A stretch of DNA of 64,000 nucleotides, taken from the sequence record NC_020077.1. One strand, 5' to 3'. Shown in pieces: positions 1,370 to 56,160 of the stretch; the first letter of the stretch is position 1; every line of letters starts with the position of its first letter. The position numbers were made by a program, and so were the translations under genes. The notes beneath the pieces are model-generated. The model was not told the origin of the DNA, ran no database searches, and was given only the letters and a program-made list of their open reading frames with translations.

Positions 1370-2146
1370 GTGATGATAGTCAGACTAGTGTCATATTCAC
1401 CTGATGGTGAAAAGGTAGTAGCTATTGCGGCTAAAATGAGTAGGAGTAGGAAAGGTTGGGATTATCATGAAAAAGAAATGACTGATGAAGAGATTGAGAC
1501 ATGGATTAGGGATGCAATTCTACATGGGTATTGGTCTGTGTTAGAGCATTCAGTTTATACTTTTTCTATTGAGGGAATTTCTAGGGTTGCGTCTCATCAG
1601 CTTGTTAGGCATAGAATAGCCTCTTATACGCAAATGTCTCATAGGTTTGCTAGGCCAATAGATGAATATTATAAACCAATAATACCTACTAACATTAAAA
1701 AGAGGGATGTTCATGAGCTAGTTAACAAAGCTTACAATAATGCTTATGAAATTTATTATGAATTGTTGAAGAGCGGAATACCCGAAGAGGATGCACGTTA
1801 TGTTTTACCAAACGCTGTTAATACAAACATCGTAGTAACTATGAATGCTAGGGAATTATATAATTTCTTTTCCCTAAGGCTCTGTTCAAGAGCTCAATGG
1901 GAAATTAGAGCAATTGCATGGAGAATGCTAGAGGAAGTAAAGAAAGTTCACCCAAGATTATTTAGATATGCTGGGCCAAATTGCATAATACATGAGAATT
2001 TCATAAGAAATGAGTATATAACTTTAGATGATGTGCTTAAAAATCACAATATAGAGTTTATATCTCAAAGATGTATTGAAGGAGTTAATAGGGATGGAAT
2101 TATAAAATGCATCATTAACTCACGTGGAGTTATTGACTCGAGGTGA
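1370..2146 (+). CDS. thyX: FAD-dependent thymidylate synthase ThyX
   Basis: SVLEH and [17 protein letters not shown] signature; AQWEIR C-terminal motif. Confidence 0.97.
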
Positions 2147-2165
2147 AGTGATGAAAACATATTTA

Positions 2166-2205
2166 CGAATTTCGAACTTGTGCTATATACAGGGACTTCG
2201 AACTT
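2166..2205 (+). repeat. TTCGAA-rich 40-bp repeat core, copy 1
   Basis: CGAATTTCGAACTTGTGCTATATACAGGGACTTCGAACTT; 38/40 identical to 27275-27314 and 37/40 to the reverse complement of 48730-48769. Confidence 0.9.
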
Positions 2206-2261
2206 TTATTGCTAAAATTTTCCCTTTCTTAAATCTCATGAGGACGAGAAAAATTCGTGAC

Positions 2262-2309
2262 GGTAGCAAATTTGCAGAAATGTCATGCCAGTTCTACAAT
2301 TTTACCAAA
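2262..2309. repeat. 48-bp tri-palindromic element, full copy
   Basis: GGTAGCAAATTTGCAGAA-ATGTCATGCCAG-TTCTACAATTTTACCAAA. Confidence 0.8.
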
Positions 2310-2377
2310 TCCCCCTTTTCCCCCTTTTTAAGTCTAGATAAGTCTAAAAGGGAAAAGATGAATAGAGGTAAGAAGAG

Positions 2378-3253
2378 ATGGCAGACACAATGAAGATCGT
2401 TTTAGGACTTTCTGATAACAGAGTGAAGTTATGGGAGTTAGGTGTGCCATTAATGATTAATCAGTTGGTGTGGGACAGTGTAGAATGGGAAAATGAAACG
2501 TGGGTAGATTCTGGTGGCTATCAAATAATGGTTAAAAAAATGCAGATTAGTGTAGATGCCGTATTGGATAAATACAAGAGGCTTGATGCAGACTATTACA
2601 TTAGCCTCGATATACCTGCAACACCTTGCGAAAAGCCTTCAGAGCTTAATTTCAAGCATTTTGAGTACCTATACACGAGACTGGATAAGAATATAATACC
2701 AGTCATTCACGCTTATGATGTTGAAAGTATTAAAAAGGCTATTGATTTCTACTCTCAATATACGGATTATATCGCATTTGGTGGGATAGTTCCACCATCT
2801 CTTAATAAGGTAGCTAGCCAAAAGCTAGCAGTTGCAATGTACCGCCTTGTTAGGAAAGAATGGAAGGGTAAAATTCACGTTTTAGGTGCTGGTTCTCCTT
2901 TCATGAGAAAGGTTTTTTATGATGCTGATAGTGTTGATACATCAACTTATAGAGTAAAGGCAATACATGGTATGGTGTTATTGCCTGGAAAAGGAGAAAG
3001 GTATGTTGGAGAGAGAAAAATAAGTTGGGGGGCTAGACGAATTAGTGAAGATGAACTTGAATCGCTAAAGGCTTTTCTAGAGAAAACTCACTATCCATTT
3101 CCTATTAGGTTTGATAATTGGATGGATAGATCACTTGTTAACGCATGGGTTTTGTTACACAGTGAGTATGAGGAAGATAATCCTCTTATCAGATATGCAC
3201 ACAACATAACAGACCCAGAGGCTGAGATAAATGAGTTATGTAGAAAGCTGTGA
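2378..3253 (+). CDS. tRNA-guanine transglycosylase superfamily protein (DpdA-like candidate)
   Basis: WVDSGGYQ, SLDIP, IAFGG, IHVLGAG and DSVDTST motifs of the TGT barrel; no PUA domain or Zn-binding CxCxxC. Confidence 0.85.
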   Translation: MADTMKIVLGLSDNRVKLWELGVPLMINQLVWDSVEWENETWVDSGGYQIMVKKMQISVDAVLDKYKRLDADYYISLDIPATPCEKPSELNFKHFEYLYTRLDKNIIPVIHAYDVESIKKAIDFYSQYTDYIAFGGIVPPSLNKVASQKLAVAMYRLVRKEWKGKIHVLGAGSPFMRKVFYDADSVDTSTYRVKAIHGMVLLPGKGERYVGERKISWGARRISEDELESLKAFLEKTHYPFPIRFDNWMDRSLVNAWVLLHSEYEEDNPLIRYAHNITDPEAEINELCRKL

Positions 3254-3788
3254 ACACTTAGAGAAATATCTTGGCTCAAATAATGAACCAATAATAAAAA
3301 AGCCCGGCTTTGACCCATTCCAACACCCTGTCGTAAGGAAATGGCATGAGTACTTTCTCAATAACTGGCATTCCAAAAAAGAAATAGCGCTTTTACTGCC
3401 CTGCACATCAGTTAAGCCTTATAATAGGTCAGCTACTCATAAATTAGCATACTCGTTATTGAGAAAGTATAAACTTGAGGATAAGGTTCAGGTTTACTCT
3501 GTCTCCGAGCCGATGTTGTTAGTCCCTAGAGAGTTAGAGAACTGTTACCCTTTCAATTCTTATGATTATCCTCCTTCTTTAATGACTGAAGAAGAAAAAC
3601 AAGAGTTCATCAGCCTACTTTCCATTGCACTCTCTCATGTCCACAATATCCATAAGAGAATAATCGCAGTTTTGCCTAAACATCATTACAAGATAGTTTA
3701 TGAGGCTTCTAAAAACATCCCAATCGAACTTTATCCTTATGGCAAATTAGCTTTTAAAACGATAGCAAATGTTATAATGAAGATATGA
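3231..3788 (+). CDS. DUF5591 / archaeosine synthase (ArcS)-like domain protein
   Basis: ALLLPCTSVKPYNRSATH (PCxxxKPY motif), SEPMLLVPRELE, YDYPP; overlaps the TGT-like gene by 23 bp. Confidence 0.8.
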   Translation: MSYVESCEHLEKYLGSNNEPIIKKPGFDPFQHPVVRKWHEYFLNNWHSKKEIALLLPCTSVKPYNRSATHKLAYSLLRKYKLEDKVQVYSVSEPMLLVPRELENCYPFNSYDYPPSLMTEEEKQEFISLLSIALSHVHNIHKRIIAVLPKHHYKIVYEASKNIPIELYPYGKLAFKTIANVIMKI

Positions 3789-3949: not shown

Positions 3950-4270
3950 ATGTCAGAGGTGGAGCGCCTAAAACCTGTAACCTTTAAGTGTGAAGATAGT
4001 CTGTTTTTAAAGCTAGAGGAAGAGGCTAAAAAAGCTAACGTCGCTAAAACTAAAATTATAAGAGAGGCATTAGCGAAGCTTTTACAACATGACATTGAGG
4101 AAATAAGGGAGTTAAGTAGAGGAACTCCTCCCTATTCAGGCAAGCGTGTAGTTTCAATAAGGCTTCCCGAAAGCCTTAATACTCAGTTAGAGATTGCTGC
4201 AGAAAAAATAAGGTCTAACAAGAGTGACCTGATAAGGGCTGCTTTAGCAGCCTACTTCAGGTTAGTGTAA
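3950..4270 (+). CDS. Tandem two-RHH DNA-binding protein
   Basis: KPVTFKCEDSLFLKLEEEAKK...IIREAL and VVSIRLPESLNTQL...DLIRAAL ribbon-helix-helix patterns. Confidence 0.85.
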   Translation: MSEVERLKPVTFKCEDSLFLKLEEEAKKANVAKTKIIREALAKLLQHDIEEIRELSRGTPPYSGKRVVSIRLPESLNTQLEIAAEKIRSNKSDLIRAALAAYFRLV

Positions 4271-4272
4271 GG

Positions 4273-5343
4273 GTGATGAAAATGGCGTATTTATACTTGC
4301 AGCTACATAAATCTTTATTAAAGAAAGTAAAGAAAGAAGCGTCACGTTTAAATGTAAAACGAAAACTTTTGATGAGTGCTGCAATTCAAGCGTTTGTCGA
4401 AAACCCGCCAGAAACCATAAATCTACCGCCAGACTTGAATAACGGATTTGAACTGACAATTGGCGTTACCTTAGAACTGCCTAAAGATGTTATAGAAAAG
4501 ATTTATTCTTACACTATATCAAAAGCTCTTTCGGTAAAAAAAGTAGCGGAGATAGCGATAACTACTTTTCTTAGCCTTTCTGATGAACAGAAAATGATCT
4601 ATATAGATAAGGAGATAAAAAGACTTGAAGAGAAGAGAAAGAGAAAACTAAGCGAAGAGCGTATGTTTCAATTTCTGGAAAGTATTGCTTCAAAAGATCC
4701 TTCTCGATCAGTTCGAATAAGTTTTAAATGTGTAGATGACTTACATAAACTACTTGAAAACGAAGCACGTGAAAGGGGAACAACAGCGAGTGAGCTTATA
4801 AGAGGTGCTGTTGAAGAATTTTTACAAAACTACTATAAGGGCAAGATAAAAATAAGAAAGCTGTATGAGGCTGCTAAAGACTCGCATTATAGCAAAGCTG
4901 GGGACAAAGTATATGACCTAAAAGTACCTACATATATTCTATTACATTTAATGGAAATAGCTGATAATGTGAAGTTGTCTGTGGCTATGCTTATTCGTCT
5001 TGCCATAATGAGATACTTGAAGCTGGTTGACATGCAGCCGCGAAAACGAGTCAGATTCGCATGTGCGGCTAGTCTTATTTTAATGATAGAGGAGGAGGTT
5101 AAAAAAACTAACACCGCAAAAGACGCAATTATAAAGGAGGCAGTGAAACAACTTTTACAGCATAGTGTCGATGAGATAAGGGAGTTAAGCAGAAAAACTT
5201 CTCCCTATTCGGGCAGCTATGAAGTTTTCATAAAGCTTCCTGAGAGCCTTGTCGTACAACTAGATGCTATTGTAAGAAAAGTAAGGACTAGTAGAAGCAA
5301 TCTCATACGGACTGCATTGGCAGCTTATTTCAAGTTAGTGTAA
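4273..5343 (+). CDS. Six-RHH DNA-binding protein
   Basis: Six strand-helix-helix units; last two homologous to 3950-4270. Confidence 0.8.
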   Translation: MMKMAYLYLQLHKSLLKKVKKEASRLNVKRKLLMSAAIQAFVENPPETINLPPDLNNGFELTIGVTLELPKDVIEKIYSYTISKALSVKKVAEIAITTFLSLSDEQKMIYIDKEIKRLEEKRKRKLSEERMFQFLESIASKDPSRSVRISFKCVDDLHKLLENEARERGTTASELIRGAVEEFLQNYYKGKIKIRKLYEAAKDSHYSKAGDKVYDLKVPTYILLHLMEIADNVKLSVAMLIRLAIMRYLKLVDMQPRKRVRFACAASLILMIEEEVKKTNTAKDAIIKEAVKQLLQHSVDEIRELSRKTSPYSGSYEVFIKLPESLVVQLDAIVRKVRTSRSNLIRTALAAYFKLV

Positions 5344-5345
5344 GG

Positions 5346-6440
5346 GTGGCAAAGATGGCATATTTACACTTTATAATGCGCAACTCTCTACTTAAAAAGG
5401 TAAACGAAGAAGCTACCCGCTTAAATGTAAAACGAACACTTTTAATGAAAGCTGCAATTCGGGCGTTTATTGAAAACCCTCCAGAAACCATACAACCGTT
5501 ACCAAATGCAATCGGCGGATTTGGACGAAAAGAAACAACACAAATTTTCTTAACACTGCCAGAAGACACTTTAGAAAAGATTTATTCTTACGCCACTGCA
5601 AAAGGACTATCAATAAGAAAGGTAGCGGAGAAGGCAGTAGCTGATTTCCTTAACTTGTCTGATGAACAGAAACTAATTTATATAAATAAGGAGATGGAAA
5701 GACTTATAGAGAAGAGAAAGGGAAAACTAGACAAAGAGTCTACACTACAATTGCTAGAGCCCGAGGCTTCAAAAGATCCTTCTCTGCTGGTTCCAATAAG
5801 TTTTAAATGTATAGATGATTTACGTAAACTACTTGCAAAAGAAGCACATGAAAGAGGAACAACGGCGAGTGAACTTGTAAGAAGAGCTGTTGAAGAATTT
5901 TTACGAAAACATGGTGATAACCTTGAGGAAATCAAAAAGCTGCATGAGGCTACTAAAGACTTGTATTATAGCGAAGTTGAGGACAAAATATGTACTTTAA
6001 AAATGCCAGCGTATATGGCAGTACAATTGGCAAAAATAGCTAATAAGATGAATGTGTCTAAGTCTGCGTTAATTCGCCTTGCGATCGTGAAATATCTGAA
6101 CCTGAGTGACACAAAGCCACAAAAACAAACAGAGCCACAAAAACACATAAGCTTCGGGTGTGCGGCTAGCCTTGTTTCAATGTTAGAAGAAGAGTCTAAA
6201 AAAGCTAACACCGCAAAAGCTGCAATTGTAAGGGAGGCAGTAACGAGGCTTTTACAGCATAGTGTTGATGAGATAAGAGAGTTAAGTAGAAGAAATCCGG
6301 CTTGTTCAGCCGACTATACAGTTTCCGTAATGCTTCCTGAGAGTCTTAATACTCAGCTAGATATTATTGCAGAAAAAGTAAGGACTACTAAGAACGATCT
6401 GATGAGGACTGCATTAGCAGTTTATTTCTGGTTGGTATAA
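5346..6440 (+). CDS. Six-RHH DNA-binding protein (paralog of 4273-5343)
   Basis: Same six-unit architecture; colinear similarity. Confidence 0.8.
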   Translation: MAKMAYLHFIMRNSLLKKVNEEATRLNVKRTLLMKAAIRAFIENPPETIQPLPNAIGGFGRKETTQIFLTLPEDTLEKIYSYATAKGLSIRKVAEKAVADFLNLSDEQKLIYINKEMERLIEKRKGKLDKESTLQLLEPEASKDPSLLVPISFKCIDDLRKLLAKEAHERGTTASELVRRAVEEFLRKHGDNLEEIKKLHEATKDLYYSEVEDKICTLKMPAYMAVQLAKIANKMNVSKSALIRLAIVKYLNLSDTKPQKQTEPQKHISFGCAASLVSMLEEESKKANTAKAAIVREAVTRLLQHSVDEIRELSRRNPACSADYTVSVMLPESLNTQLDIIAEKVRTTKNDLMRTALAVYFWLV

Positions 6441-6451
6441 GGGTGATATAA

Positions 6452-7663
6452 ATGGCATCTATCGAGTTCATTATCCCTGAAACATTATTAGATAAAGTAA
6501 AGGAAGAGGCAAAACGATTTTATGTTAGTGACAAACTTCTGATGAAGGCTGCTATTATTGCATTTATTGAAAATTCTACTGATGCTATAAAACCATTACC
6601 ACTTAATTATAATAAAAAAGAAGAAGAGTTGAAACTTATTCGCTTAGACTTACCAGAAGATATTGCGCAAAAGGTTCATCTTTACAGCAAGATAAAAGGA
6701 TTTCCGATTCGAAGGATCATTAGTAGTATGGTAGATAACTTCCTTAATCTTAATGATGAACGGAAAAAGTTCTATATAGATGAATTAAAAACAATACTAC
6801 CTAGCCTTAAAGTTGGTGCTTGGCGTATAATAAAACTGAAAGAAGCTTTAGCTTCAGGAAATCTTGATTCGCTAATTCAAGTAAGCTTTAAGTGTAATAA
6901 AGAGTTATACGTACTGCTTAAGGACGAGGCATTGAGAAAACATATAATGATAAATGTACTTGTAAGGCAGGTTGTTGATGATTTTGTGCAAAAGTATGGT
7001 GATAATCATGAGGTAATAAAAAAGATGCATAAAGTTGCTAATCACCTCTTTTATGGAAAGATTAACGATAGGGCTCTCGATGTAGAGTTGTCCGCACGTG
7101 TCTTACTGCAATTGGAAAAAATTTCGAGACAGACGCTAGTTTCTAAAAACGATATTATTCGCCTTGCGATTATGAGTCATTTGAATTTACTGAACGAGAG
7201 CGTCCTTGAACGGCCAATTTTTATAAAAAACGATCTACCACAACAAAATAATAAAGACAACCAGGCACAGACAGATAGTTTTATTAATATACTGTTGCCA
7301 AATAAACTTTACAATTTATTAAAGAGATATGTAATGCCTAACTACGAAGCCAATAAGGAAAGAGAGATTAAGTCTGTAGTCAGTAATGTTGTGACAGAAG
7401 TAATAACACAGTGGGCAAAAGAGCGTTTTTCCGAAAGCGGCGATGTTGAAACTTACGTAGTATGGCAAATAATTTTGGGCGATTTAAAAATGAGCTTTTA
7501 CCCTAGCCTAAAAAGAGGCACAATAGTAAAGAAGCAAGATATCCTAGATGCGATGAAGAATATAAAATATGTATTAGATGAAACAAGGTTATTTAAAACC
7601 TTTAAGGAACGCGGTTATCTAGAGGAGATCGATAATGATAATGTTAAGATTCTACTTCTGTGA
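6452..7663 (+). CDS. Multi-RHH protein (about 5 RHH) with C-terminal helical/winged-helix-like domain
   Basis: Four RHH units shared with paralogs, then FINILLPNKLYNLL and a C-terminal tail nearly identical in DNA to 10299-10527. Confidence 0.8.
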   Translation: MASIEFIIPETLLDKVKEEAKRFYVSDKLLMKAAIIAFIENSTDAIKPLPLNYNKKEEELKLIRLDLPEDIAQKVHLYSKIKGFPIRRIISSMVDNFLNLNDERKKFYIDELKTILPSLKVGAWRIIKLKEALASGNLDSLIQVSFKCNKELYVLLKDEALRKHIMINVLVRQVVDDFVQKYGDNHEVIKKMHKVANHLFYGKINDRALDVELSARVLLQLEKISRQTLVSKNDIIRLAIMSHLNLLNESVLERPIFIKNDLPQQNNKDNQAQTDSFINILLPNKLYNLLKRYVMPNYEANKEREIKSVVSNVVTEVITQWAKERFSESGDVETYVVWQIILGDLKMSFYPSLKRGTIVKKQDILDAMKNIKYVLDETRLFKTFKERGYLEEIDNDNVKILLL

Positions 7664-7678
7664 GTTTTTCGCCAACTT

Positions 7679-8758
7679 TTGGTGATGAAGATGGCATATT
7701 TAGACTTTTATATGCATAATTCTTTATTAAATAAAGTAAAGGAAGAAGCAAAACGGCTTAATGTAAGTGACAAACTTCTGATGAAGGCCGCTATTATTGC
7801 ATTTGTTGAAAATCCTACCGATTCTATAAAACCATTACCAGATGGTAATCATAACAACGGAAAGGTAGTAAGAGTTATCATAAAGCTTTCAGAAGACATT
7901 ATCAATAAATTTATACTTTATGCGAAGTCCAAAAATGCTACAATTAAAGAAGTTGCTGAAAATGCGATAGCTAACTTCCTTACTCTAGGCGATGAGCAGA
8001 AAAGGCCCTATATAGAAGAAGAAAAAAGGCAGTTAGCCGAAGCTAGGAAAAAATTAGCTGAACTTAATAAAAAGGAAATGCAAAAGAAGTCTTCAACACA
8101 GCTGCAAGCTGATATAGGGCCAAACAGCCTTATTATAATGTCCTTTAAATGCAATCCTAACTTATACAAACTACTTGAAAATGAGGCAATGAAAAGACGC
8201 GTAGCAGTTGCAGAGCTCATAAGAAATGCTGTTGCGGATTTTCTACAGAAATATGGGAATAATTATGATGAAATTATTAGATTATATTTTGCGGTCGATC
8301 TCTTCTTTTCTAAAAATAATACGAGTAATATTGGTACTAAAATATGTATCGTAAAAATGCCAGCATATATGGCATCAGAATTAGAAAAAATTGCAAGACA
8401 AACATCAGTCACAAAAAGTGGTGTTATTCGCCTTGCGATTATGAACCATTTGAATTTGTTAAATGGAAGTGTCACAGAACAACAGAAGATTACACAAAAT
8501 GAGGCAGCAAATGATCCGCCTAATGATCCGCCACAACAAAATAATAAAGATGAACTCTTACGAGCAAGTCGTTTTATTAGTGTGTCTTTACCAGAACCAC
8601 TTTATAATTTACTAAAGAAATATGTAATGCTTAAGTATAATGTTAATAAGGAAAGAGAGATTAAGTCTATAGTCAGTAACATTATAGCAGAAGTATTGGC
8701 ACAGTGGTCACAAGAGCATTTCTCCAAAAGCGGCGATGTTGAAACTCGTGTTCGGTAA
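7679..8758 (+). CDS. Multi-RHH protein lacking the C-terminal domain of its paralogs
   Basis: Follows paralog 6452 to SGDVET, then ends RVR* just before a palindrome element. Confidence 0.8.
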   Translation: MVMKMAYLDFYMHNSLLNKVKEEAKRLNVSDKLLMKAAIIAFVENPTDSIKPLPDGNHNNGKVVRVIIKLSEDIINKFILYAKSKNATIKEVAENAIANFLTLGDEQKRPYIEEEKRQLAEARKKLAELNKKEMQKKSSTQLQADIGPNSLIIMSFKCNPNLYKLLENEAMKRRVAVAELIRNAVADFLQKYGNNYDEIIRLYFAVDLFFSKNNTSNIGTKICIVKMPAYMASELEKIARQTSVTKSGVIRLAIMNHLNLLNGSVTEQQKITQNEAANDPPNDPPQQNNKDELLRASRFISVSLPEPLYNLLKKYVMLKYNVNKEREIKSIVSNIIAEVLAQWSQEHFSKSGDVETRVR

Positions 8759-8761
8759 ACC

Positions 8762-8893
8762 TTGTCATGTCAGTTCTGCAAATTTACCAAAGTCCCTTTT
8801 TCCCCTTGTGTCTTTTCTTACTACCGTTTATGATTTTGCGTAATTTTACGTATTTGACTATGAAGCTCATGGTAGAAAGTTTTATAAGCTTAA
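8762..8893 (+). promoter_or_regulatory. Partial palindrome element plus early-promoter header
   Basis: TTGTCATGTCAG-TTCTGCAAATTTACCAAA (8762-8791); AGAAAGTTTTATAAG at 8874-8888. Confidence 0.85.
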
Positions 8894-8921
8894 ATGGTCA
8901 CAGTAATAGTCGGTAGGAAAA

Positions 8922-9242
8922 ATGTCAAGTAAAGAGTATTTAAAACAAACAAGCTTTAAGTGTGAGGATAGTCTGTTTTTAAAGACTGAGGAAGAGTCTA
9001 AAAAAACTAATACTACAAAAGCCACAATTGTAAGGGAGGCAGTGAAACAACTTTTACAGCATAGGGTCGATGAAATAAGGGAGTTAAGTAAAAAAACTTC
9101 TCCCTATTCAGGTGGCTATATAGTTTCCATAATACTTCCTGAGAGTCTCAACGCCCAACTAGATGCTATTGCAGGAAAAGTAAGGACTAGTAGAAGCAAT
9201 CTCATACGGACTGCATTAGCAGCCTATTTCAGGCTAGTTTAG
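8922..9242 (+). CDS. Tandem two-RHH protein (paralog of 3950-4270)
   Basis: Same length and architecture; DNA close to 5100-5343. Confidence 0.85.
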   Translation: MSSKEYLKQTSFKCEDSLFLKTEEESKKTNTTKATIVREAVKQLLQHRVDEIRELSKKTSPYSGGYIVSIILPESLNAQLDAIAGKVRTSRSNLIRTALAAYFRLV

Positions 9243-9243
9243 C

Positions 9244-10527
9244 GTGATGAGAATGAAGTCTCTGATCTTCATCATCCCTAACGCCTTGTTAGATAAAGTA
9301 GTAGAAGAGGCAGAACGGCTTGGTGTATCTGGTGCGCTTTTGATGAGGGCGGCTATTATTGCATTTGCCGAAAATCCTATCTACTTTATAGAACCACTGC
9401 CACCCAATTATAATAAAGAGGAGTTAAAAGGAATTTCTTTAAAATTACCCGAAGATATTATAAAGAAGATTCATCTTTATGCCAACTCAAGAGGATTTTC
9501 GATCAGGAGAATAGTTTGGAGCATGATAGATCACTTTCTTACTCTTGATGATGAGCAGAAAATGTTTTATATAAAAAAAGTAAAAGAAATATTATCTAGA
9601 ACTAGGATTGGGCGAAAACGCAAAACAAAACTACAAGAGACTATTGTTTTTGGAGATCTTAACGCGTTAGTTGGGACAAGCTTTGCGTGTAGTAACGAGT
9701 TGCACAACCTCATTGAGAATGAAGCAATAAAAAAACACATAACAATAAGTGAGCTTATAAGAGAGACTATTAATGAGTTTTTGAAAAAATATAGTAATAA
9801 TTTTGAGGAAATCAGAAAGCTGCATGAGACTGCTAGCAATTTATTTTCTGGAGAGGATCCTCAAAGAGTGATCACTGTAAAGTTACCTGCACATGTTTTA
9901 CTGCAATTGGAAAAAATTTCGGGAAAGACACTAGTTCCTAAAGGCATTATTATTCGTCTCGCAATTATGAACCATTTTAATTTACTGAATAGAATCGTCA
10001 CAAAACAACGGAAGGCCACACAAAATGAAGCAGCAAATGATCCGCCTGATGATCCGCCACCACAAAATTATAAACCCAAACCTAGATGGGCAGGAGGTTT
10101 TGTCAGTGTGTTGTTACCAGAACCACTTTATGACTTACTGAAAGAGTATGTAATGCTTAAGTATCATCGCGGTTTTATACTAAGCATTAATGAAGTCATT
10201 AGTGAAGTTACGATTAAGTTTGAAGTTAGCGAAATTGCAACAAAAATATTGAAACAGTGGGCAAAGAGACGATTCTCTGGAAAGTCTGACGTTCAAACTT
10301 ACGTAGTATGGCAAATAATTTTGGGCGATTTAAAAATGAGCTTTTACCCTGGCCTAAAAAGAGGCACAATAGTAAAGAAGCAAGATATTCTAGATGCGAT
10401 GAAGAATATAAAATTAAAATCTGTCATAAACAAAACGGAGTTGTTTGAGGAGTTGTTTGAGATATTTAAGGAACGCGGTTACCTAAAGGAGATCGATAAT
10501 GATAATGTCAAGATTTTACTTCTGTGA
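9244..10527 (+). CDS. Multi-RHH protein with C-terminal domain (paralog of 6452-7663)
   Basis: RHH units; identical TYVVWQIILGDLKMSFYP...EIDNDNVKILLL tail. Confidence 0.8.
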   Translation: MMRMKSLIFIIPNALLDKVVEEAERLGVSGALLMRAAIIAFAENPIYFIEPLPPNYNKEELKGISLKLPEDIIKKIHLYANSRGFSIRRIVWSMIDHFLTLDDEQKMFYIKKVKEILSRTRIGRKRKTKLQETIVFGDLNALVGTSFACSNELHNLIENEAIKKHITISELIRETINEFLKKYSNNFEEIRKLHETASNLFSGEDPQRVITVKLPAHVLLQLEKISGKTLVPKGIIIRLAIMNHFNLLNRIVTKQRKATQNEAANDPPDDPPPQNYKPKPRWAGGFVSVLLPEPLYDLLKEYVMLKYHRGFILSINEVISEVTIKFEVSEIATKILKQWAKRRFSGKSDVQTYVVWQIILGDLKMSFYPGLKRGTIVKKQDILDAMKNIKLKSVINKTELFEELFEIFKERGYLKEIDNDNVKILLL

Positions 10528-12520: not shown

Positions 12521-13927
12521 ATGAACCCAATCTTAAATTTCCTGAAGAACGCTAACATTCCTATTGTTTCCATTATATCATCATTCATCTTCTTTGTTGT
12601 CGCTGCAAAGCTTTCAACCCCGGCATTTTTTGGACAAGTAGCTATAATTCAGCTGTTTTCCACTGCGGTCTCATTGCTTGAACTAGTCAATACTTCTATT
12701 GTCTCGCGAGAAATCGCATATCAACTTGCCAAGAACGAGCTAGACAAGAAGTTCATAAGTACTGCCATTATCACATCATTTTTAATCTCGCCGCTCTTTC
12801 TCGCCTTATTGGCCTTTTCTAACTATCTCAGATTTTTAATTCCTTATTTAATTCTCTTTTTGCTATATCATTATCTAACTGCCATTCTAATAGGCTTGAA
12901 TAAATTTACTGAAAACATGATTTCATGGAGCATATTTTTCGTAATACGCTGGGGCGTATCAGTAATTGCAGTAATTTTTAACAGTATTTTACTCTTCATC
13001 GCAATCTGGACTCTCGCGGCGTTAATATGTGACATTTATTCGCTTCTAGTAGTGATAAAGAGCATTTCCGGTTTGCCTTTCGCCTTTGACAAGACTCTTT
13101 TCAAAAGATTAGTTAAAGAGAGTTATGCGCTTAACCTAAAGAGCATTGCTAGCTTTTTCAGTACACAAGGCGATAGGCTAATAGTTGTCTCACTCCTAGG
13201 TACTTATTTTTTGGCCATTTACCAATTCGCTGCGTTATTGGCAGATGTGCCGGGAATGATCTTAAGGGCTGTTAACGATTCAGTTCTTGTTTCTTCTTCT
13301 TATTTCAAGGCTAAAGGCGCTGATGAGTTGCGAATGAGTAGGTTAACGTTTAAGGCAGTGGCAATTCTAACATTCGTGACCGCAATAGTGTTTTTAGCAT
13401 TAGTGCGCTTTTTAGTGCCCACATTTTTCCCTGCATACAAGGCCAGCTTAGATGCGCTTTCCATCCTTTCGCTTTCTTTTATTTTTTCAATACCATTTCT
13501 TGTTCTCACACAATTCATCATTTCGTACAAGAGAGATCTTAGGCTATTTACGTTAATTTCTCTGATTGATGCTGTATTAGTTGTATTAACATCCATTGCA
13601 TTAGTTCCAAGGTTAGGAATCTTAGGCGCTGCCATTTCGCAATTGATTGTCGCAGTGGTCAATAACGTTTTGAATCTTCTCTATTCTCTGCATGTAAAGG
13701 TGTTTAAAGTTGGAAAGAAAGAGTTATTGCTGATGATCATGATGCCAGTCATCTTTGTTTATGAGTTGTTTTTTGACAAAGCTTATTTCAGCGTGTTGCT
13801 ATTATTTGTGCTGTTTGTCTTGTTCAAGCTAACCAAAATTTTCAATAAGCATGAGAAGGATGTAATTACCTATTTTATTGAGAAAAAACTTAGTTTTACT
13901 AAAAGATTTTTTGAAGTGATTTTTTGA
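12521..13927 (+). CDS. Wzx/MATE-like oligosaccharide flippase (polysaccharide biosynthesis protein)
   Basis: About 12-14 hydrophobic segments; TQGDRLIV..LG...LAIYQFA and PRLGILGAAIS motifs. Confidence 0.8.
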   Translation: MNPILNFLKNANIPIVSIISSFIFFVVAAKLSTPAFFGQVAIIQLFSTAVSLLELVNTSIVSREIAYQLAKNELDKKFISTAIITSFLISPLFLALLAFSNYLRFLIPYLILFLLYHYLTAILIGLNKFTENMISWSIFFVIRWGVSVIAVIFNSILLFIAIWTLAALICDIYSLLVVIKSISGLPFAFDKTLFKRLVKESYALNLKSIASFFSTQGDRLIVVSLLGTYFLAIYQFAALLADVPGMILRAVNDSVLVSSSYFKAKGADELRMSRLTFKAVAILTFVTAIVFLALVRFLVPTFFPAYKASLDALSILSLSFIFSIPFLVLTQFIISYKRDLRLFTLISLIDAVLVVLTSIALVPRLGILGAAISQLIVAVVNNVLNLLYSLHVKVFKVGKKELLLMIMMPVIFVYELFFDKAYFSVLLLFVLFVLFKLTKIFNKHEKDVITYFIEKKLSFTKRFFEVIF

Positions 13928-14107
13928 TTAAAGTTTATTTCTCCCAAAGGAAGGAAATTTTGTTATCATACGGCCCCAAGATAACAGAAGATCCGGTTAC
14001 GAAGTTATCTTTTGATCGATTTTAGTGAAGAAAGATAACAAAGAACGAATAAGCAAAAATCCCCTTAGTTTAGAATATTTTAAGCACAATAATTTTTTAA
14101 TCGCGTT

Positions 14108-14440
14108 TTGCAATTTTACCATATGAGTGGGCACACATTAGAACTTATACTAAAACCGATTGATTTTCGTAAAGTTACAACAAAAGAAGAAAAAGAAGCT
14201 ATAAAAAAATATGTTAATAGAAATTATGAGATAATAGAAGTTAATAAAAATGAGCAAGAAATAGAAATAAAAATCACATATAATAAGCTACCAGATACTG
14301 TTTTAATCAAAGATAGCTTAATAAATGATTGTGTATTAAATTACAAGATTGGTAGACTCGTAGTCAGACGTAAAGCAATGTATATTAAACTTGTTCCTGG
14401 AAAGCTTGTGGAACGTAAATCAGTCTCTACTTCATTATAG
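14108..14440 (+). CDS. Hypothetical protein
   Basis: 110-aa ORF; ATG at 14123 is the more likely start. Confidence 0.55.
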   Translation: MQFYHMSGHTLELILKPIDFRKVTTKEEKEAIKKYVNRNYEIIEVNKNEQEIEIKITYNKLPDTVLIKDSLINDCVLNYKIGRLVVRRKAMYIKLVPGKLVERKSVSTSL

Positions 14441-14453
14441 AAAGTTTTATAAG
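14439..14453 (+). promoter_or_regulatory. Early promoter BRE/TATA
   Basis: AGAAAGTTTTATAAG identical to other copies. Confidence 0.8.
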
Positions 14454-14485
14454 TTTAAATGTTGATCATATTTATGGTGGGAAAA

Positions 14486-14788
14486 ATGTTGAAGGCAATT
14501 CCTTTTGAAATAAACTACAAAATGCTCTTTCTAGACCTCGATGAAGAGACTAATGACGTGTATGCCTACTTGACAGACCCAAAGCTAAAGCTAGAAAGGC
14601 GTGAAAAATTTAGAGAATTCACTGAGTTCAAAAACTTCATCGATGAGTTAAGTAGAGACTACATCATAAAGCCTGTAGCTGGCTATGTCAATCAAAATGG
14701 TAATGAGCCTCAACTATCATTTTTGATAGTTGTACTATTCAAAAAGCTTGTAGCTGCTGACGTTCAATATACAACAACAGTGAATTAA
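14486..14788 (+). CDS. Hypothetical early protein
   Basis: ORF 14459-14788; ATG 14486 after GGTGGG RBS. Confidence 0.7.
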   Translation: MLKAIPFEINYKMLFLDLDEETNDVYAYLTDPKLKLERREKFREFTEFKNFIDELSRDYIIKPVAGYVNQNGNEPQLSFLIVVLFKKLVAADVQYTTTVN

Positions 14789-14803
14789 CTGGGGGGTTAA
14801 AAG

Positions 14804-15559
14804 ATGGCAGAAGAGGCTGAGAAATTAAAACTCCTAGTTGGTCATTTTAAGGATTTGGCATTAGCAAAAGAGTTCTTAATGCAAGTTACGCCCCAAAAGC
14901 TTGGCACGATTAAGTATTCATATACAGTGGCCATTTCACAAAACACTGGACTAGAGTTCATTCCAACTGAAGCTAAAATAAATCCAATCGTCATAGGGGA
15001 TGCACAACGTAAATATGTGAAAAAACTCGTAACAGAAAAAACAACAGCCCTTTCACAAAACATGCTAACAGCACCAAAAAACTTGAACAATCGTACGATT
15101 TCCAGCCTTTACACACGTGCCGAAACTTATGGCGACCTCTTGTTTGGAATGCGTAAATTGCTTTGGAAAATGCAAGATGATATAAGAGAAGCTGGAAAAG
15201 AGGCAAACCTCTTACCTAGCTTAAAAGTAATGCAAATAAACACGTTAAGATTGCTTTTCAACGTATGTATGGAATTTATGCTCAGAAGAGGGAATATAGT
15301 TACATTTGATTACGATAAAGGATCAGTTCTTCTTTATAGATTAGCAGATCAAAATGGTGTTTTGACTTTCGCCAACTACAGTGAAATAGTGTATGCGAAT
15401 GATCTCGCGTTTGATTTTCCAGCGCAAAAGCTAGTAGAAATAGAGTCACATTTAAGGGCAAGGGAAATGGTCCCACTCGTTAACACAGTAATGAAATTGG
15501 TACATTGGGTGTTTGACTTTACTTATGATTATTTGAATGGTAGAAAACATATTTTATAA
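14804..15559 (+). CDS. Hypothetical protein
   Basis: 251-aa ORF with GGGGG RBS. Confidence 0.75.
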
Positions 15560-15585
15560 GGTTCTTCATTAGAGAGGGTTCCAAA

Positions 15586-16104
15586 ATGATTTTCAGTGAT
15601 AGAGATTTAAAATATTACCTGGAAAAGGGATGGATAAAGATTGAGCCATTAAGAGAAGACACTATTAGGGAAAATGGGGTAGATTTAAGGATTGGTAACG
15701 AGATTGCTAGATTCAAGAAAAATAGGATTTTTGATCCTGACAAAGATTCCATAGATGATTTTATAGAGAAAGAGGTGGGGAATGAGTTTATAATAAATCC
15801 CCATGAGCATGCATTATTAACTACAGAAGAATATGTAAGATTGCCTAATGATGTAATGGCATTCGTAAATCTTAGATCAACATTTGCTAGGTTAGGTCTT
15901 TTCATTCCTCCAACTATCGTAGATGCAGGATTTGAAGGGCAATTAACTATAGAGTTAGTAGGATCAGAATTCCCAATAAAACTAAAATATGGAATGAGAT
16001 TTATCCACCTAATCTTCGCAAAAACACTAACACCAGTTGAAAAGCCATATAATGGAAAATATCAGAAACAAATGGGTGTGACGCCGGCCAAGCTCTCAAG
16101 TTGA
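15586..16104 (+). CDS. dcd: dCTP deaminase / dUTPase family protein
   Basis: [40 protein letters not shown] motifs. Confidence 0.9.
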
Positions 16105-38884: not shown

Positions 38885-39060
38885 ATTTAAAAATACATTA
38901 TACCTTGTCACCCCACAGTTAGGAGGGGGTGTTGAGCCTCAACCTTACGATTCACTGTGGTTACCAACCACTCCACGTGAGGGTCATGGGCCCCCTTCGA
39001 GCCCCAAGGCATGAGGCTCACATCTAATTTTTTAGCTATATTCCACGCTGCTATAACGTC
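38885..39060 (-). ncRNA. Putative omega-RNA overlapping tnpB 3' end, guide in flank
   Basis: GC-rich block nearly identical in DNA between both tnpB copies, while gene bodies differ at synonymous sites; boundaries approximate. Confidence 0.6.
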
Positions 39061-40252
39061 CCTATCATGCGTAAAGCCACACTTCTTGCATTTTAGAACC
39101 CTAGGTTGCCAGCCTCTCCTCTGGGCATTGTTTGTCATAATATTTAGGCTAGAACCACACTTAGGGCATGTCCTAGAGGTATTTTTAGGGTTTACAAATT
39201 CCACTTTTATACCGTATTCTAATGCCTTTTCTGTAATACGTTTCTGTATTCCTCTTATTGCTGATTGTTTAAGTCTATGTGCATCAAATGATTTAAGTCC
39301 ATCTTTCTTAAGCGCCTTATCCTGGAAATTTTTAGGAAGCTTTTCCAATACAAGAGCAGCATTCTCCTTCTTAACTATCTTTGCTACGAAAGAAGCAACC
39401 TTATCTCTCAGTGCTTTTTTAACACTCTTCTCTCTTAACTTTCTTAAAGCAATACGAAGTGATCTCTTATCATGCGCATGTCTTTCCTGGATAGATTTTC
39501 TTCTGTATGCATAGCCTAACACTACCTTACTGTGATTAGTTACGAGTGTGATTGCTTTATGGTCTGGTAGTGTGAAGAGTGTCACATTATTCTCATTCAC
39601 ATCAATGCCAATTACTCTGTTGTAGTTTGTGTTTGGTTCGACGGTTTTACGAAAAAATACATATAACGTCAGCTTTCTGTCTTCGATTTTCCATCTACAA
39701 GAGTCTCTAAGAGTCCAGCCGCCATTGTAGTGTATGTAAAACTGTTTGTGGAAAAGTAATGGTATTCTTATCCATCCCTTGTGGGTAGAGATTTCAACGC
39801 CTTGGAAAGACAGTTTCCAAGACATATTGCCACAGCTGACAGTCCATTGTTTAACTTCTGGTTTTTCAGTGTAAGCAAGGCCTTTCTTTTTCAGCTTTCT
39901 GAAGGATTCCAGTCTAGATGCTGCATCGCGTATTGCCTGTTGAACATATTGTGATGGTAAGTCTGGGTACTTCTCTCTAAAGTACTTGTATAATTCTTTA
40001 ATCCCTCTTAGCCAAGATGTTGTGCCTTTTTGATACATTACATTTACTGCTTCTTTTACCATTTCACCATATACCTTATAAACATAAGAAAGAGCTTCGG
40101 CCTTTTTTGCCGTTAGCCTTAGTGAGACAAGTTCAACCGTTTTTGTAACCTTTTCGCTCATTACGTACCACCAACCCCTCCCTGGAATCACCAGGCATTG
40201 GGGGCTATCATAAGCAGCGAAGTGAAAATTAATAAACTTTACTTTTTATCTC
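38902..40252 (-). mobile_element. IS200/IS605-family solo-tnpB (IS1341-like) element 1
   Basis: tnpB without tnpA; upstream ~55 bp and downstream end GGGTGACAAGGT shared with element 2. Confidence 0.8.
38908..40161 (-). CDS. tnpB: RNA-guided endonuclease TnpB
   Basis: RuvC-I GIDVNE, RuvC-II VLEKL, Zn finger CPKC/CKKC, RuvC-III DRDVIAAWN; MSEKV start at 40161 (ORF extends to 40191). Confidence 0.93.
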   Translation of the reverse strand: MSEKVTKTVELVSLRLTAKKAEALSYVYKVYGEMVKEAVNVMYQKGTTSWLRGIKELYKYFREKYPDLPSQYVQQAIRDAASRLESFRKLKKKGLAYTEKPEVKQWTVSCGNMSWKLSFQGVEISTHKGWIRIPLLFHKQFYIHYNGGWTLRDSCRWKIEDRKLTLYVFFRKTVEPNTNYNRVIGIDVNENNVTLFTLPDHKAITLVTNHSKVVLGYAYRRKSIQERHAHDKRSLRIALRKLREKSVKKALRDKVASFVAKIVKKENAALVLEKLPKNFQDKALKKDGLKSFDAHRLKQSAIRGIQKRITEKALEYGIKVEFVNPKNTSRTCPKCGSSLNIMTNNAQRRGWQPRVLKCKKCGFTHDRDVIAAWNIAKKLDVSLMPWGSKGAHDPHVEWLVTTVNRKVEAQHPLLTVG

Positions 40253-55889: not shown

Positions 55890-56027
55890 ATGATTAATAT
55901 AAATGCCAGCGATCTAGTAGGTCTATATGATGCCATGTATGAAATAGAAAAGCTTAAGGATGACATTATGGAAATATCTGCTAGATTGAAGCAAATGCAG
56001 AATGACCTTGTCACCCGCCTAGGCTAG
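55890..56027 (+). CDS. Small coiled-coil ORF (45 aa), probably interrupted by tnpB element 2
   Basis: MININASDLVGLYDAMYEIEKLKDDIMEISARLKQMQNDLVTRLG; TTTTAAG at 55861. Confidence 0.55.
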   Translation: MININASDLVGLYDAMYEIEKLKDDIMEISARLKQMQNDLVTRLG

Positions 56028-56160
56028 GGTGTTGGGCCTCAACCTTACGGTTCATTGTAGCAACTTGCCACTCCACGTGAGGGTCATGGGCCCCCTTCGA
56101 GCCCCAAGGCACGAGGCTCACATCTAATTTTTTAGCTATATTCCACGCTGCTATAACGTC
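55988..56160 (-). ncRNA. Putative omega-RNA of tnpB element 2
   Basis: Same conserved GC-rich 3' block; boundaries approximate. Confidence 0.6.

What the first reader, a model, noticed from the sequence alone, without database searches (positions are those of the whole stretch)
2378..3788. TGT/DpdA-like plus DUF5591 gene pair: candidate 7-deazaguanine DNA hypermodification using host preQ0
Seen: a stand-alone TGT barrel (DSGGY, LDIP, DSVD catalytic aspartates) overlaps a stand-alone PCxxxKPY (DUF5591) gene, directly downstream of thyX. No folE/queD/queE/queC is visible in the window. Known: DpdA paralogs of TGT insert 7-deazaguanines into phage DNA; DUF5591 is the catalytic part of ArcS, which acts on preQ0 in the archaeosine pathway; crenarchaea make preQ0 for tRNA archaeosine but generally use non-ArcS enzymes for the last step. 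Inference: the virus inserts host preQ0 into its DNA and converts it to dG+, dADG or a new adduct. The alternative is remodelling of host tRNA.
Basis: partly seen in the sequence, partly recalled or inferred. Interest (0 to 1): 0.75.

Follow-up and report, generated by a model that had tools for sequence, protein, structure and literature searches.

The report
Known STSV2 deazaguanine gene pair
These two overlapping genes are the already published DpdA-like/ArcS2 pair of the archaeal virus STSV2, whose DNA carries only traces of 7-carboxy-7-deazaguanine; what is new here is that the virus copied the pair from a host chromosomal operon that sits next to a helicase-nuclease module.

Summary
The window is Sulfolobus virus STSV2 (100% identical; record bases 12108-76107). 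ORF 2378-3253 is a single-domain TGT-fold protein with all three catalytic aspartates. The overlapping ORF 3231-3788 is a stand-alone DUF5591 domain with an exact ArcS motif. The virus has no preQ0-synthesis genes.

The idea is already published. STSV2 DNA holds dCDG at 149 per 10^6 nucleotides, about 23 bases per genome. No dG+, dADG or dPreQ0 was found. So there is a trace 7-deazaguanine mark in the DNA, not hypermodification.

New here:
- Both genes have 62-71% identical, equally overlapping chromosomal homologs across Sulfolobales. These include S. tengchongensis and the laboratory host S. islandicus (SiRe_0019/0018). Cui 2023 reported that the host lacks such genes.
- The viral copies nest inside the host clade.
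- The host operon repeatedly lies beside a non-canonical HerA-like ATPase, an SMC-like protein and a NurA nuclease.

I infer that the virus stole the modification half of a Dpd-like modification-restriction system. This is untested. The source of the base and the origin of dCDG remain open.

The parts
1370..2146 (+). thyX (FAD-dependent thymidylate synthase, STSV2_13). It is upstream context, not part of the modification pair.
   Evidence: PF02511 at 1.1e-67; TIGR02170 at 2.8e-61; annotation.
2151..2393 (+). STSV2_14, an 80-codon annotated ORF of unknown function between thyX and ORF1. Its end overlaps the ORF1 start. STSV1 has a different, longer ORF17 at this position.
   Evidence: Annotation; no Pfam hit; STSV1 layout.
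2378..3253 (+). ORF1 = STSV2_15, a DpdA-like single-domain TGT-fold base-exchange enzyme (291 aa; a likely alternative start is M5 at 2390). Key codons: D44 2507-2509 (general acid/base), D78 2609-2611 and H111 2708-2710 (base recognition), G135-V138 2780-2791 (pocket), D187 2936-2938 (nucleophile). It has no zinc motif and no C1/C2/PUA tRNA-binding domains.
   Evidence: phrog_887 at 5.9e-56; profile versus ArcTGT 1iq8 with residue map; invariant residues; AF2 pLDDT 93.5; Foldseek; dN/dS 0.11 versus STSV1.
3231..3253 (+). 23-nt overlap of ORF1 and ORF2 (ORF2 in the +1 frame), with GAGG 9 nt upstream of the ORF2 ATG. This suggests translational coupling. The chromosomal homologs overlap in the same way.
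   Evidence: Sequence; the cellular pairs overlap by 16-52 nt in the same gene order in L003-L008 and L032.
3231..3788 (+). ORF2 = STSV2_16, ArcS2: a stand-alone ArcS C1/DUF5591 catalytic domain (185 aa). The motif P57..H70 is encoded at 3399-3440.
   Evidence: PF17884 at 8.1e-20; NF040592 at 1.4e-20 over positions 273-403 only; motif invariant in 38 homologs; AF2 pLDDT 94.4; top PDB match AF0587 2q07; dN/dS 0.10.

Best explanation
The two overlapping genes are a virus-borne copy of a chromosomal Sulfolobales operon.

ORF1 is a minimal, zinc-less TGT-superfamily enzyme. Like DpdA, it most likely swaps a small number of guanines in double-stranded viral DNA for a cell-derived 7-deazaguanine base (preQ0 or CDG). 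The mechanism would be the Asp44/Asp187 double displacement.

ORF2 is the isolated catalytic domain of archaeosine synthase. It most likely works on the C7 nitrile of the inserted (or free) base.

The measured outcome in virion DNA is about 10-23 dCDG residues per genome.

The most likely purpose is to give viral DNA the same rare mark the host puts on its own DNA. That would let it escape the HerA-like/SMC-like/NurA module genetically linked to the host copy of the operon.

What is shown:
- the gene identities, catalytic residues and folds;
- the host origin of the pair;
- the linkage to HerA/NurA in host genomes;
- dCDG in STSV2 DNA (published).

What is inferred:
- that ORF1 is the enzyme that inserts the base into DNA;
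- what ORF2 does chemically;
- the restriction role of the host module;
- the anti-restriction role of the viral pair.
For: Identity and chemistry:
- The catalytic Asp triad and a preQ0-type GG(I/V)V pocket are conserved.
- His111 sits where ArcTGT has Gln169 and S. Montevideo DpdA has His181 (PMC10164549).
- ORF2 has an exact ArcS motif.
- Both genes are under purifying selection between STSV1 and STSV2 (dN/dS about 0.1).

DNA as target:
- Published LC-MS/MS found dCDG at 149 per 10^6 nt in STSV2 DNA.
- ORF1 lacks every tRNA-binding domain of ArcTGT (291 aa).
- The nt-1 DpdA2 plus ArcS2 pair makes dPreQ0 and then dG+ in plasmid DNA in E. coli.

Host origin:
- Homologs at 71% and 65% identity, with the same overlap, lie in S. 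tengchongensis CP146016.1. The same pair lies in S. islandicus CP001400.1. In REY15A it corresponds to the SiRe_0019/0018 operon.
- The flanking genes there are housekeeping genes.
- The STSV clade nests inside the Sulfolobaceae chromosomal clade (SH-aLRT 99; consistent).

Linkage to DNA machinery:
- A HerA-like DUF87 ATPase lies within 2.5 kb of the TGT-like gene in 16 of 46 loci. A NurA-domain protein lies within about 6 kb in 9-10 loci.
- These occur in different gene orders across Sulfolobaceae, Desulfurococcales, Thermoproteaceae/Caldivirga and Njordarchaeota.
- The HerA is not the repair HerA: 103 bits against a cutoff of 800.
- SiRe_0014 (NurA) and SiRe_0016 (SMC-like) rise with the CRISPR-adaptation activator Csa3a. 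SiRe_0018/0019 are co-repressed with csa3a and a defence ATPase.
- The virus carries only the two-gene half.
Against: - No biochemical test exists for ORF1 or ORF2 from any Sulfolobales source.
- The DNA modification is tiny and of an unexpected kind (dCDG). ArcS chemistry does not obviously produce it.
- The host's own operon could have made it, because the virus is propagated on S. islandicus, which carries the operon.
- By sequence and fold, ORF1's nearest characterised relative is the tRNA enzyme ArcTGT, not bacterial DpdA. It has no NF041059 hit, and DpdA 7ui4 is hit only by the wider family profile at 1.5e-21 against 5e-47 for ArcTGT.
- PADLOC has no model matching ORF1 or ORF2.
- In Ignisphaera the TGT-like gene sits among housekeeping genes with no HerA or NurA.
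- Some Sulfolobales keep the pair without the HerA/NurA genes (L004, L032).
- Cui et al. report no 7-deazaguanine pathway in the host, which leaves the substrate unexplained.
Confidence: 0.6

Rival explanations
1. The target is tRNA. The pair is a minimal ArcTGT plus ArcS that inserts preQ0 at G15 of tRNA and converts it to archaeosine. It would keep or boost tRNA stability in the enlarged, long-lived infected cell. The trace dCDG in DNA would then be a side reaction or unrelated.
For: - ArcTGT is the closest solved and HMM relative.
- UniRef, JGI and RefSeq name homologs as tRNA-guanine(15) transglycosylase or queuine tRNA-ribosyltransferase.
- ArcS acts on preQ0 in RNA and does not need the L-shape of tRNA (PMC11298593).
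- The PUA domain and the zinc site are dispensable for ArcTGT activity (PMC4770233).
- The DNA modification level is very low.
Against: - The canonical ArcTGT family is reported as conserved in all archaea, including Crenarchaeota (PMC1852104). The short pair is therefore an extra paralog rather than the housekeeping enzyme.
- ORF1 lacks all C-terminal tRNA-binding domains.
- ORF1 has the DpdA-type His instead of the TGT-type Gln.
- The repeated linkage is to DNA translocase and nuclease genes, not to tRNA or translation genes.
- A 7-deazaguanine is present in virion DNA.
Confidence: 0.2
2. The viral pair is redundant or works only on free bases and nucleotides. In this reading the dCDG in virion DNA is made by the host's own SiRe_0019/0018-type operon, or arises chemically. 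The viral copies would act on the free preQ0/CDG pool (salvage or interconversion), or sequester the base to disarm the host system.
For: - The propagation host S. islandicus carries an intact operon.
- T. kodakarensis ArcS accepts preQ0 nucleoside and its 5'-monophosphate.
- The authors themselves concluded that further unknown proteins are needed to explain dCDG.
- Rudiviruses pair their TGT-like gene with a membrane permease, which hints at base traffic.
Against: - ORF1 keeps the full polynucleotide base-exchange catalytic set, including the covalent nucleophile D187. An enzyme acting only on free bases would not need it.
- Both viral genes are under purifying selection and conserved in STSV1, STSV2 and STSV4.
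- No transporter homolog is present in STSV2.
Confidence: 0.15

Closest known systems
Vibrio phage nt-1 DpdA2 + ArcS2 (Hutinet 2019; Cui 2023)
   Same: A viral TGT-fold transglycosylase sits next to a stand-alone DUF5591 (ArcS core) protein. In E. coli, DpdA2 alone gives dPreQ0 in DNA, and adding ArcS2 gives dG+.
   Different: - nt-1 also encodes FolE, QueD, QueE and QueC; STSV2 encodes none.
- The nt-1 ArcS motif is degenerate; STSV2's is exact.
- The STSV2 product is dCDG, not dG+.
- ORF1 is only distantly similar to DpdA2 (Foldseek TMq 0.49, 11% identity).
Bacterial Dpd system (Salmonella Montevideo DpdA/DpdB/DpdC plus DpdD-K)
   Same: - A TGT paralog with the same Asp/Asp/His/Asp active-site set inserts preQ0 into DNA.
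- A second enzyme then works on the nitrile.
- The modification genes are clustered with helicase/nuclease restriction genes.
- Modification is sparse and marks self DNA.
   Different: - ORF1 gets no hit to the DpdA model NF041059.
- There is no ParB-like DpdB and no DUF328 DpdC.
- The nitrile enzyme is ArcS-type.
- The linked genes are HerA-like, SMC-like and NurA rather than DpdD-K.
- The zinc site has been lost.
- The virus carries only the modification half.
Archaeal tRNA archaeosine pathway (ArcTGT, then ArcS with RaSEA)
   Same: The two catalytic domains appear in the same order of action. ArcTGT is the nearest solved structure to ORF1, and ORF2 is the ArcS C1 domain with the full motif.
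   Different: - There are no C1/C2/PUA domains on ORF1 and no Nt/C2/PUA on ORF2.
- Scores fall far below the equivalog cutoffs: 20 against 350, and 73.5 against 440.
- There is no RaSEA-like radical SAM in the virus.
- ORF1 has His instead of Gln169.
- The genomic partners are DNA enzymes.
Rudiviral TGT-like singletons (SIRV1, SIRV2, SIRV3 and others)
   Same: They belong to the same protein family (35-41% identity; TM 0.88 to the Beppu rod-shaped virus homolog). They also derive from inside the Sulfolobales cellular clade.
   Different: - They have no DUF5591 partner.
- They sit on a long branch.
- They are paired instead with a 399-aa permease-like membrane protein.
- No modification data are known to me.
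BREX-related 'BRC' system with TGT + HerA/FtsK + GNAT (NAR 2026, PMC12839542)
   Same: It is a precedent for a TGT-family gene embedded with a HerA/FtsK translocase in a predicted defence system. It is found in archaea and bacteria.
   Different: That system has PglZ, DUF6079, STAND, DUF4007 and GNAT components. I found none of these here by Pfam. The Sulfolobales module has DUF5591, an SMC-like protein and NurA instead.

Membership tests
TGT superfamily | (beta/alpha)8 barrel resembling ArcTGT/TGT catalytic domains | tested here: met
   AF2 model with pLDDT 93.5. Foldseek top hits are 1iq8 (E 2.3e-10) and then bacterial TGTs.
TGT superfamily | Three invariant aspartates: general acid/base, base recognition, covalent nucleophile | tested here: met
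   D44, D78 and D187 are invariant in 67 sequences. They align with ArcTGT D95, D130 and D249.
TGT superfamily | Structural zinc site CxCxxC...H | tested here: not met
   The ORF1 clade has no such motif, whereas the wider family consensus keeps CxCPxC. The site is not catalytic: T. acidophilum ArcTGT lacks it and is still active.
Canonical ArcTGT (TgtA, TIGR00432) | Equivalog score of at least 350 bits, plus C1, C2 and PUA tRNA-binding domains | tested here: not met
   20.1 bits (E 1.8e-4) over positions 76-248 only; the protein is 291 aa. No PF01702 hit.
Bacterial DpdA (NF041059) | Match to the NCBIfam DpdA model | tested here: not met
   No hit at E <= 1. Only 50 of 137 wider-family representatives hit it, and weakly.
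DpdA (DNA-guanine transglycosylases, functional sense) | His in place of the TGT Gln at the base-recognition position (His181 in S. Montevideo DpdA) | tested here: met
   H111 is invariant and aligns with ArcTGT Q169. The role of His181 is described in PMC10164549.
DpdA (functional sense) | Guanine to 7-deazaguanine exchange in DNA | not testable with these tools
   Only indirect evidence exists: published dCDG in STSV2 DNA. No enzyme assay has been done.
DpdA4 (archaeal-virus subfamily, DUF6610 / PF20314) | Match to PF20314 | tested here: not met
   No such Pfam hit at E <= 1.
ArcS2 / DUF5591 | PF17884 above the gathering score | tested here: met
   71.6 bits against a cutoff of 26, E 8.1e-20.
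ArcS2 / DUF5591 | Catalytic motif PC-X3-KPY-X2-S-X2-H | tested here: met
   P57 C58 K62 P63 Y64 S67 H70. PCKPY is invariant and S and H are at least 90% conserved in 38 homologs.
Canonical ArcS (NF040592) | Equivalog score of at least 440 bits; Nt, C2 and PUA domains; a RaSEA radical-SAM partner | tested here: not met
   73.5 bits covering positions 273-403 only. No radical SAM protein in STSV2.
Dpd-like modification-restriction system (host module) | Modification genes co-located with helicase/nuclease effector genes across lineages | tested here: met
   HerA-like gene in 16 of 46 loci and NurA-like gene in 9-10 loci, in varied gene orders and phyla.
Dpd-like modification-restriction system (host module) | Restriction of unmodified DNA and protection by the modification | not testable with these tools
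   Only expression hints are available. PADLOC matches the HerA component only.

The most novel reading that the evidence does not exclude
Sulfolobales and other Thermoproteota, and some Asgard archaea, possess an undescribed Dpd-like system. In it, a zinc-less TGT paralog plus a stand-alone ArcS domain mark chromosomal DNA with a rare 7-deazaguanine. A linked, non-canonical HerA-like / SMC-like / NurA machine destroys unmarked DNA. STSV-type viruses captured the modification half, and rudiviruses independently captured the transglycosylase, as anti-restriction devices. The dCDG seen in STSV2 DNA would be this mark or its breakdown product.
Probability: 0.3. Interest if true: 0.8.

Novelty: already known. 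Interest (0 to 1): 0.4.

Why it matters
The flagged finding is not new. The gene pair, its DpdA/ArcS2 reading and the decisive mass-spectrometry test are all in print.

Two things remain of value:
- STSV2 is a published unsolved case: a 7-deazaguanine in DNA with no known source and an unexpected chemistry.
- The host-genome context found here changes the question. The hosts do carry the same operon, it is cell-cycle regulated, and it is wired to a HerA/NurA module.

This gives a concrete hypothesis that can be tested genetically in S. islandicus REY15A: an archaeal 7-deazaguanine modification-restriction system, with viral mimicry of its mark.

Tried and rejected
- **RaSEA lead.** A radical-SAM gene lies next to the TGT-like gene in Ignisphaera, and I suspected the ArcS partner RaSEA. 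It is the tetraether lipid synthase Tes (685 bits), and the other neighbour is ribonucleotide reductase. So there is no pathway link there. The radical SAM 7 kb upstream in Sulfolobus is a TIGR04084 SPASM protein.
- **ABC transporters.** The ABC-transporter genes near the TGT-like gene in Thermoproteus and others are generic ABC/ABC-2 components grouped by ATPase similarity. I do not treat this as a specific association.
- **STSV2 homologs of the host module.** STSV2 has no homolog of the HerA-like, SMC-like, 229-aa or NurA proteins, and none of the rudiviral permease.
- **PADLOC.** It has no model for ORF1 or ORF2.
- **Unknown proteins.** The 1011-aa and 232-aa proteins of the host module have no Pfam, NCBIfam or PDB relatives.
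- **IMG/VR.** A scan with DUF5591 patterns returned only STSV1 and STSV2.
- **Phylogeny against phage DpdA.** tblastn finds no phage DpdA at E <= 1e-5. Structure-level scores to phage DpdA1-4 representatives (TMq 0.40-0.64) are no better than to ArcTGT. A joint tree would not be reliable at this divergence, so I did not build one.
- **Host preQ0 pathway.** I could not test whether S. tengchongensis or S. islandicus encode tgtA, queC, queD or queE.
- **Papers not reachable.** Phillips 2012 (PMC3289047) is not held. The paper cap stopped one further look-up.
Full report
**What the window is.** Bases 1370-3788 are 100% identical to Sulfolobus virus STSV2 (JQ287645 / NC_020077.1) at record positions 13477-15895. 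The window is therefore record bases 12108-76107. STSV1 and STSV4 carry the same genes at 94-96% nucleotide identity. RefSeq annotates ORF1 as STSV2_15 'queuine tRNA-ribosyltransferase' and ORF2 as STSV2_16 'hypothetical protein'.

**Checking the observation.**

Both ORFs are present as described. They overlap by 23 nt, with ORF2 in the +1 frame and a GAGG 9 nt upstream of its ATG.

ORF1:
- It is too divergent for Pfam's TGT model and scores 20 bits against TgtA, whose cutoff is 350.
- It matches PHROG 887 at 5.9e-56.
- A profile of 18 homologs finds P. horikoshii ArcTGT at 9e-5.
- The AlphaFold model (pLDDT 93.5) is a TIM barrel. Its best PDB matches are ArcTGT (E 2e-10) and then bacterial TGTs.

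The profile alignment gives this residue map onto ArcTGT:

| ORF1 | ArcTGT |
|---|---|
| D44 | D95 |
| Y48 | F99 |
| D78 | D130 |
| H111 | Q169 |
| G135-G136-I137-V138 | G195-G196-V197-V198 |
| D187 | D249 |

D44, D78, H111 and D187 are invariant in 67 homologs.

- The two branched hydrophobic residues after GG are the preQ0-type pocket described for ArcTGT (PMC5699537).
- His at the Gln169 position is what S. Montevideo DpdA has (His181; PMC10164549).
- The ORF1 clade has lost the CxCxxC zinc motif, which the wider family keeps. That site is not catalytic, and T. acidophilum ArcTGT lacks it too (PMC4770233).

ORF2:
- It is a clean DUF5591 domain (8.1e-20) that covers only positions 273-403 of the ArcS model.
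- It carries an exact PC-X3-KPY-X2-S-X2-H motif.
- Its model (pLDDT 94.4) best matches AF0587, an uncharacterised DUF5591-PUA protein.

A Pfam scan of 69 other annotated STSV2 proteins (E <= 1e-4; 25 of the 28 families hit are listed) shows no FolE, QueD, QueE, QueC, QueF or radical-SAM family. Both genes are under purifying selection between STSV1 and STSV2, with dN/dS about 0.1.

**It is already published.**
- Hutinet et al. 2019 listed 12 Ligamenvirales and 2 Bicaudaviridae among the viruses carrying DpdA-type or G+ synthesis genes.
- Cui et al. 2023 devote a section to STSV2. It 'encodes DpdA and ArcS', so dG+ was expected.
- LC-UV-MS/MS found only dCDG, at 149 per 10^6 nucleotides. dADG, dPreQ0, dPreQ1 and dG+ were all zero.
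- The authors state that the host S. tengchongensis encodes no Q/G+ pathway protein (data not shown). They say the source of the base and the route to dCDG are unknown, and they rename the enzyme ArcS2.
- From 149 per 10^6 nt I compute about 23 modified bases per 76,107-bp duplex. That is about 0.085% of G rather than the stated 0.04%, which would be about 11 bases. Either way it is a trace mark, not hypermodification.

**What I found beyond the paper.**

*Host chromosomal homologs.*
- Both proteins have close chromosomal homologs in many Sulfolobales: Saccharolobus, Sulfolobus, Sulfurisphaera, Acidianus, Stygiolobus, Sulfuracidifex and Ca. Aramenus.
- In S. tengchongensis CP146016.1, a 294-aa protein (71% identical to ORF1) overlaps a 195-aa DUF5591 protein (65% identical to ORF2), in the same order as in the virus.
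- The upstream neighbours are housekeeping genes conserved across genera: a DsbH-type thioredoxin, a short-chain dehydrogenase, TenA and NucS. This is not a provirus.
- S. islandicus, on which STSV2 is routinely grown (PMC7480081), has the same arrangement.
- In REY15A these genes are SiRe_0019 and SiRe_0018. They are described as one operon and are among the 17 genes most repressed by the cell-cycle regulator aCcr1. That set also includes csa3a, the DNA-uptake gene sedA and a predicted phage-defence ATPase (PMC9976878).

*Trees.*
- In the ORF1 tree the STSV clade nests inside the Sulfolobaceae chromosomal clade. It is next to Saccharolobus and S. tengchongensis (SH-aLRT 99 for the enclosing clade).
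- The cellular branches broadly follow taxonomy.
- The rudiviral proteins form a separate long branch that also lies inside the Sulfolobales clade.
- The shorter ORF2 gives a consistent but unresolved picture.
- So the virus captured a host operon.

*Linkage to a helicase-nuclease module.*
- In five Sulfolobaceae species representatives, plus S. tengchongensis and S. islandicus, four genes follow the pair on the same strand. They are a DUF87 HerA-like ATPase (about 535 aa), a protein of about 1011 aa annotated SMC-like in REY15A, a protein of about 230 aa, and a NurA-domain protein.
- The ATPase is not the repair HerA: 103 bits against a cutoff of 800. REY15A's canonical herA-mre11-rad50-nurA operon is SiRe_0061-0064.

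The linkage recurs in other arrangements and lineages:

| Locus | Lineage | Arrangement |
|---|---|---|
| L009 | Stygiolobus | DUF5591, TGT-like, NurA |
| L033 | Desulfurococcales | TGT-like, DUF5591, NurA, HerA-like, 1478-aa AAA protein |
| L029 | Njordarchaeota | HerA-like upstream of TGT-like and DUF5591; NurA downstream on the opposite strand |
| L039, L040, L041, L044, L045 | Thermoproteaceae and Caldivirga | TGT-like next to HerA-like, no DUF5591 |
| L010, L038, L049 | Sulfolobaceae, Thermoproteus, Njordarchaeota | a second HerA-like type next to TGT-like |

- Overall, 16 of 46 loci have a HerA-like gene within 2.5 kb, and 9-10 have a NurA-like gene within about 6 kb.
- SiRe_0014 (NurA) and SiRe_0016 (SMC-like) rise when the CRISPR-adaptation activator Csa3a is overexpressed (PMC5587795).
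- STSV2 has no homolog of any of these four proteins.
- A TGT gene embedded with a HerA/FtsK translocase has been proposed in a BREX-related system of different composition (PMC12839542). I found no paper describing this module.

**Mechanism.**

The best-supported reading is that ORF1 is a DNA-guanine transglycosylase of the DpdA kind. It would use the conserved double-displacement chemistry, with D187 as nucleophile and D44 as acid/base, on a small number of sites. ORF2 would act on the nitrile of the deazaguanine. The base must come from the cell.

- That 7-deazaguanine reaches STSV2 DNA is shown (published).
- That ORF1 does it, and what ORF2 does, are inferred.
- Sulfolobales in general make archaeosine: S. 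acidocaldarius and Sulfurisphaera tokodaii tRNAs contain G+15. A preQ0/CDG pool is therefore plausible, but I could not verify the pathway in the STSV2 hosts.
- dCDG could arise in three ways: direct insertion of CDG (the QueE product); hydrolysis of a nitrile or amidine adduct at 78 C and low pH; or chemistry of ArcS2 that differs from the nt-1 enzyme.

The purpose I think most likely is mimicry of the host's self-mark to evade the linked HerA/SMC-like/NurA machine. This rests on gene linkage, on the virus carrying only the modification half, and on expression hints. It has not been tested.

**Rivals.**
- *tRNA target.* This is kept alive by the closeness to ArcTGT and by the dispensability of the PUA and zinc elements. 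It is weakened by four points: the canonical ArcTGT is reported in all archaea; ORF1 has the DpdA-type His; the pair is linked to DNA enzymes; and the DNA adduct exists.
- *Free-base role or redundancy with the host operon.* This cannot be excluded, because the propagation host carries the operon. The intact covalent-catalysis residues and the purifying selection argue that the viral enzymes work on a polynucleotide.

**Verdict.** The finding as flagged is already known, including the outcome of the proposed decisive experiment. The residual interest lies in the unsolved dCDG and substrate problem, and in the host-operon and HerA/NurA context reported here. That context contradicts the published statement that the host lacks such genes and offers a testable model.

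Noticed in passing
L003 10001-18144 (S. tengchongensis CP146016.1); L055 8145-16032 (S. islandicus CP001400.1); also L005-L008, L009, L029, L033, L039-L041, L044, L045: A chromosomal six-gene module: TGT-like, DUF5591, a non-canonical HerA-like ATPase, a protein of about 1011 aa annotated SMC-like, a protein of about 230 aa, and a NurA-domain protein. Partial versions occur in other Thermoproteota and in Njordarchaeota. It looks like an undescribed Dpd-like modification-restriction system.
   Followed up: partly
L059 2294-3493 and 3502-4434 (SIRV3 gp09/gp08); same adjacency annotated in SIRV2, SIRV4, SIRV11: In rudiviruses the TGT-like gene sits 8 nt downstream of a 399-aa protein annotated as an amino-acid permease (sub-threshold AA_permease_2, 1.3e-4). 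It could be a base-salvage transporter. STSV2 and the cellular loci have no homolog.
   Followed up: partly
L027 (Planomonospora alba JCM 9373, 31,951-bp contig), L026 (Streptomyces gamaensis), L046 (Paenochrobactrum glaciei), L048 (Nocardioides koreensis): Four bacterial genome assemblies contain rudivirus-type TGT contigs. The L027 stretch is 99.8% identical to SIRV3, and L026 carries the same SIRV3 permease and TGT-like genes. L046 and L048 were not compared with SIRV3. This is almost certainly contamination of the assemblies.
   Followed up: partly
L011 (contig labelled Thermogutta sp. MAG23, Planctomycetota): This contig carries the archaeal DUF5591 / TGT-like / HerA-like trio and groups with Conexivisphaera-type sequences in the tree. 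It is probably a mis-binned archaeal contig.
   Followed up: no
window 3231-3788 (ORF2 model): After AF0587, the next structural matches of the DUF5591 model are SMUG1 uracil-DNA glycosylases (E about 4e-4, TMq about 0.49). This is a possible distant fold kinship with base-flipping DNA enzymes. I did not evaluate it further.
   Followed up: no
window 3950-10527 (STSV2_17 to STSV2_23): A run of seven paralogous genes encodes proteins with one or more ribbon-helix-helix domains (RHH_1, 2e-10 to 5e-11). They lie immediately downstream of the pair. A published study states that STSV2 lacks an aCcr1 homolog, so their role is open.
   Followed up: no
window 38908-40191 and 56011-57261 (STSV2_50, STSV2_66): Pfam finds two STSV2 proteins with Cas12f1-like TNB and RuvC domains (TnpB-type, IS200/605-like). 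By annotation these are most likely the two 'transposase' genes STSV2_50 and STSV2_66, which have no STSV1 counterpart noted.
   Followed up: no
window 2378 versus 2390: All cellular and rudiviral homologs begin at the MKI that corresponds to Met5 of ORF1. The true start may therefore be the ATG at 2390, although the ATG at 2378 has a GAGGT 7 nt upstream. STSV1's deposited ORF18 is annotated 21 codons shorter than the region of homology.
   Followed up: partly
PMC10516641, Table 1 versus text: 149 dCDG per 10^6 nucleotides works out at about 0.085% of G for a genome with 17.5% G. The paper states 0.04%, a factor-of-two discrepancy.
   Followed up: yes
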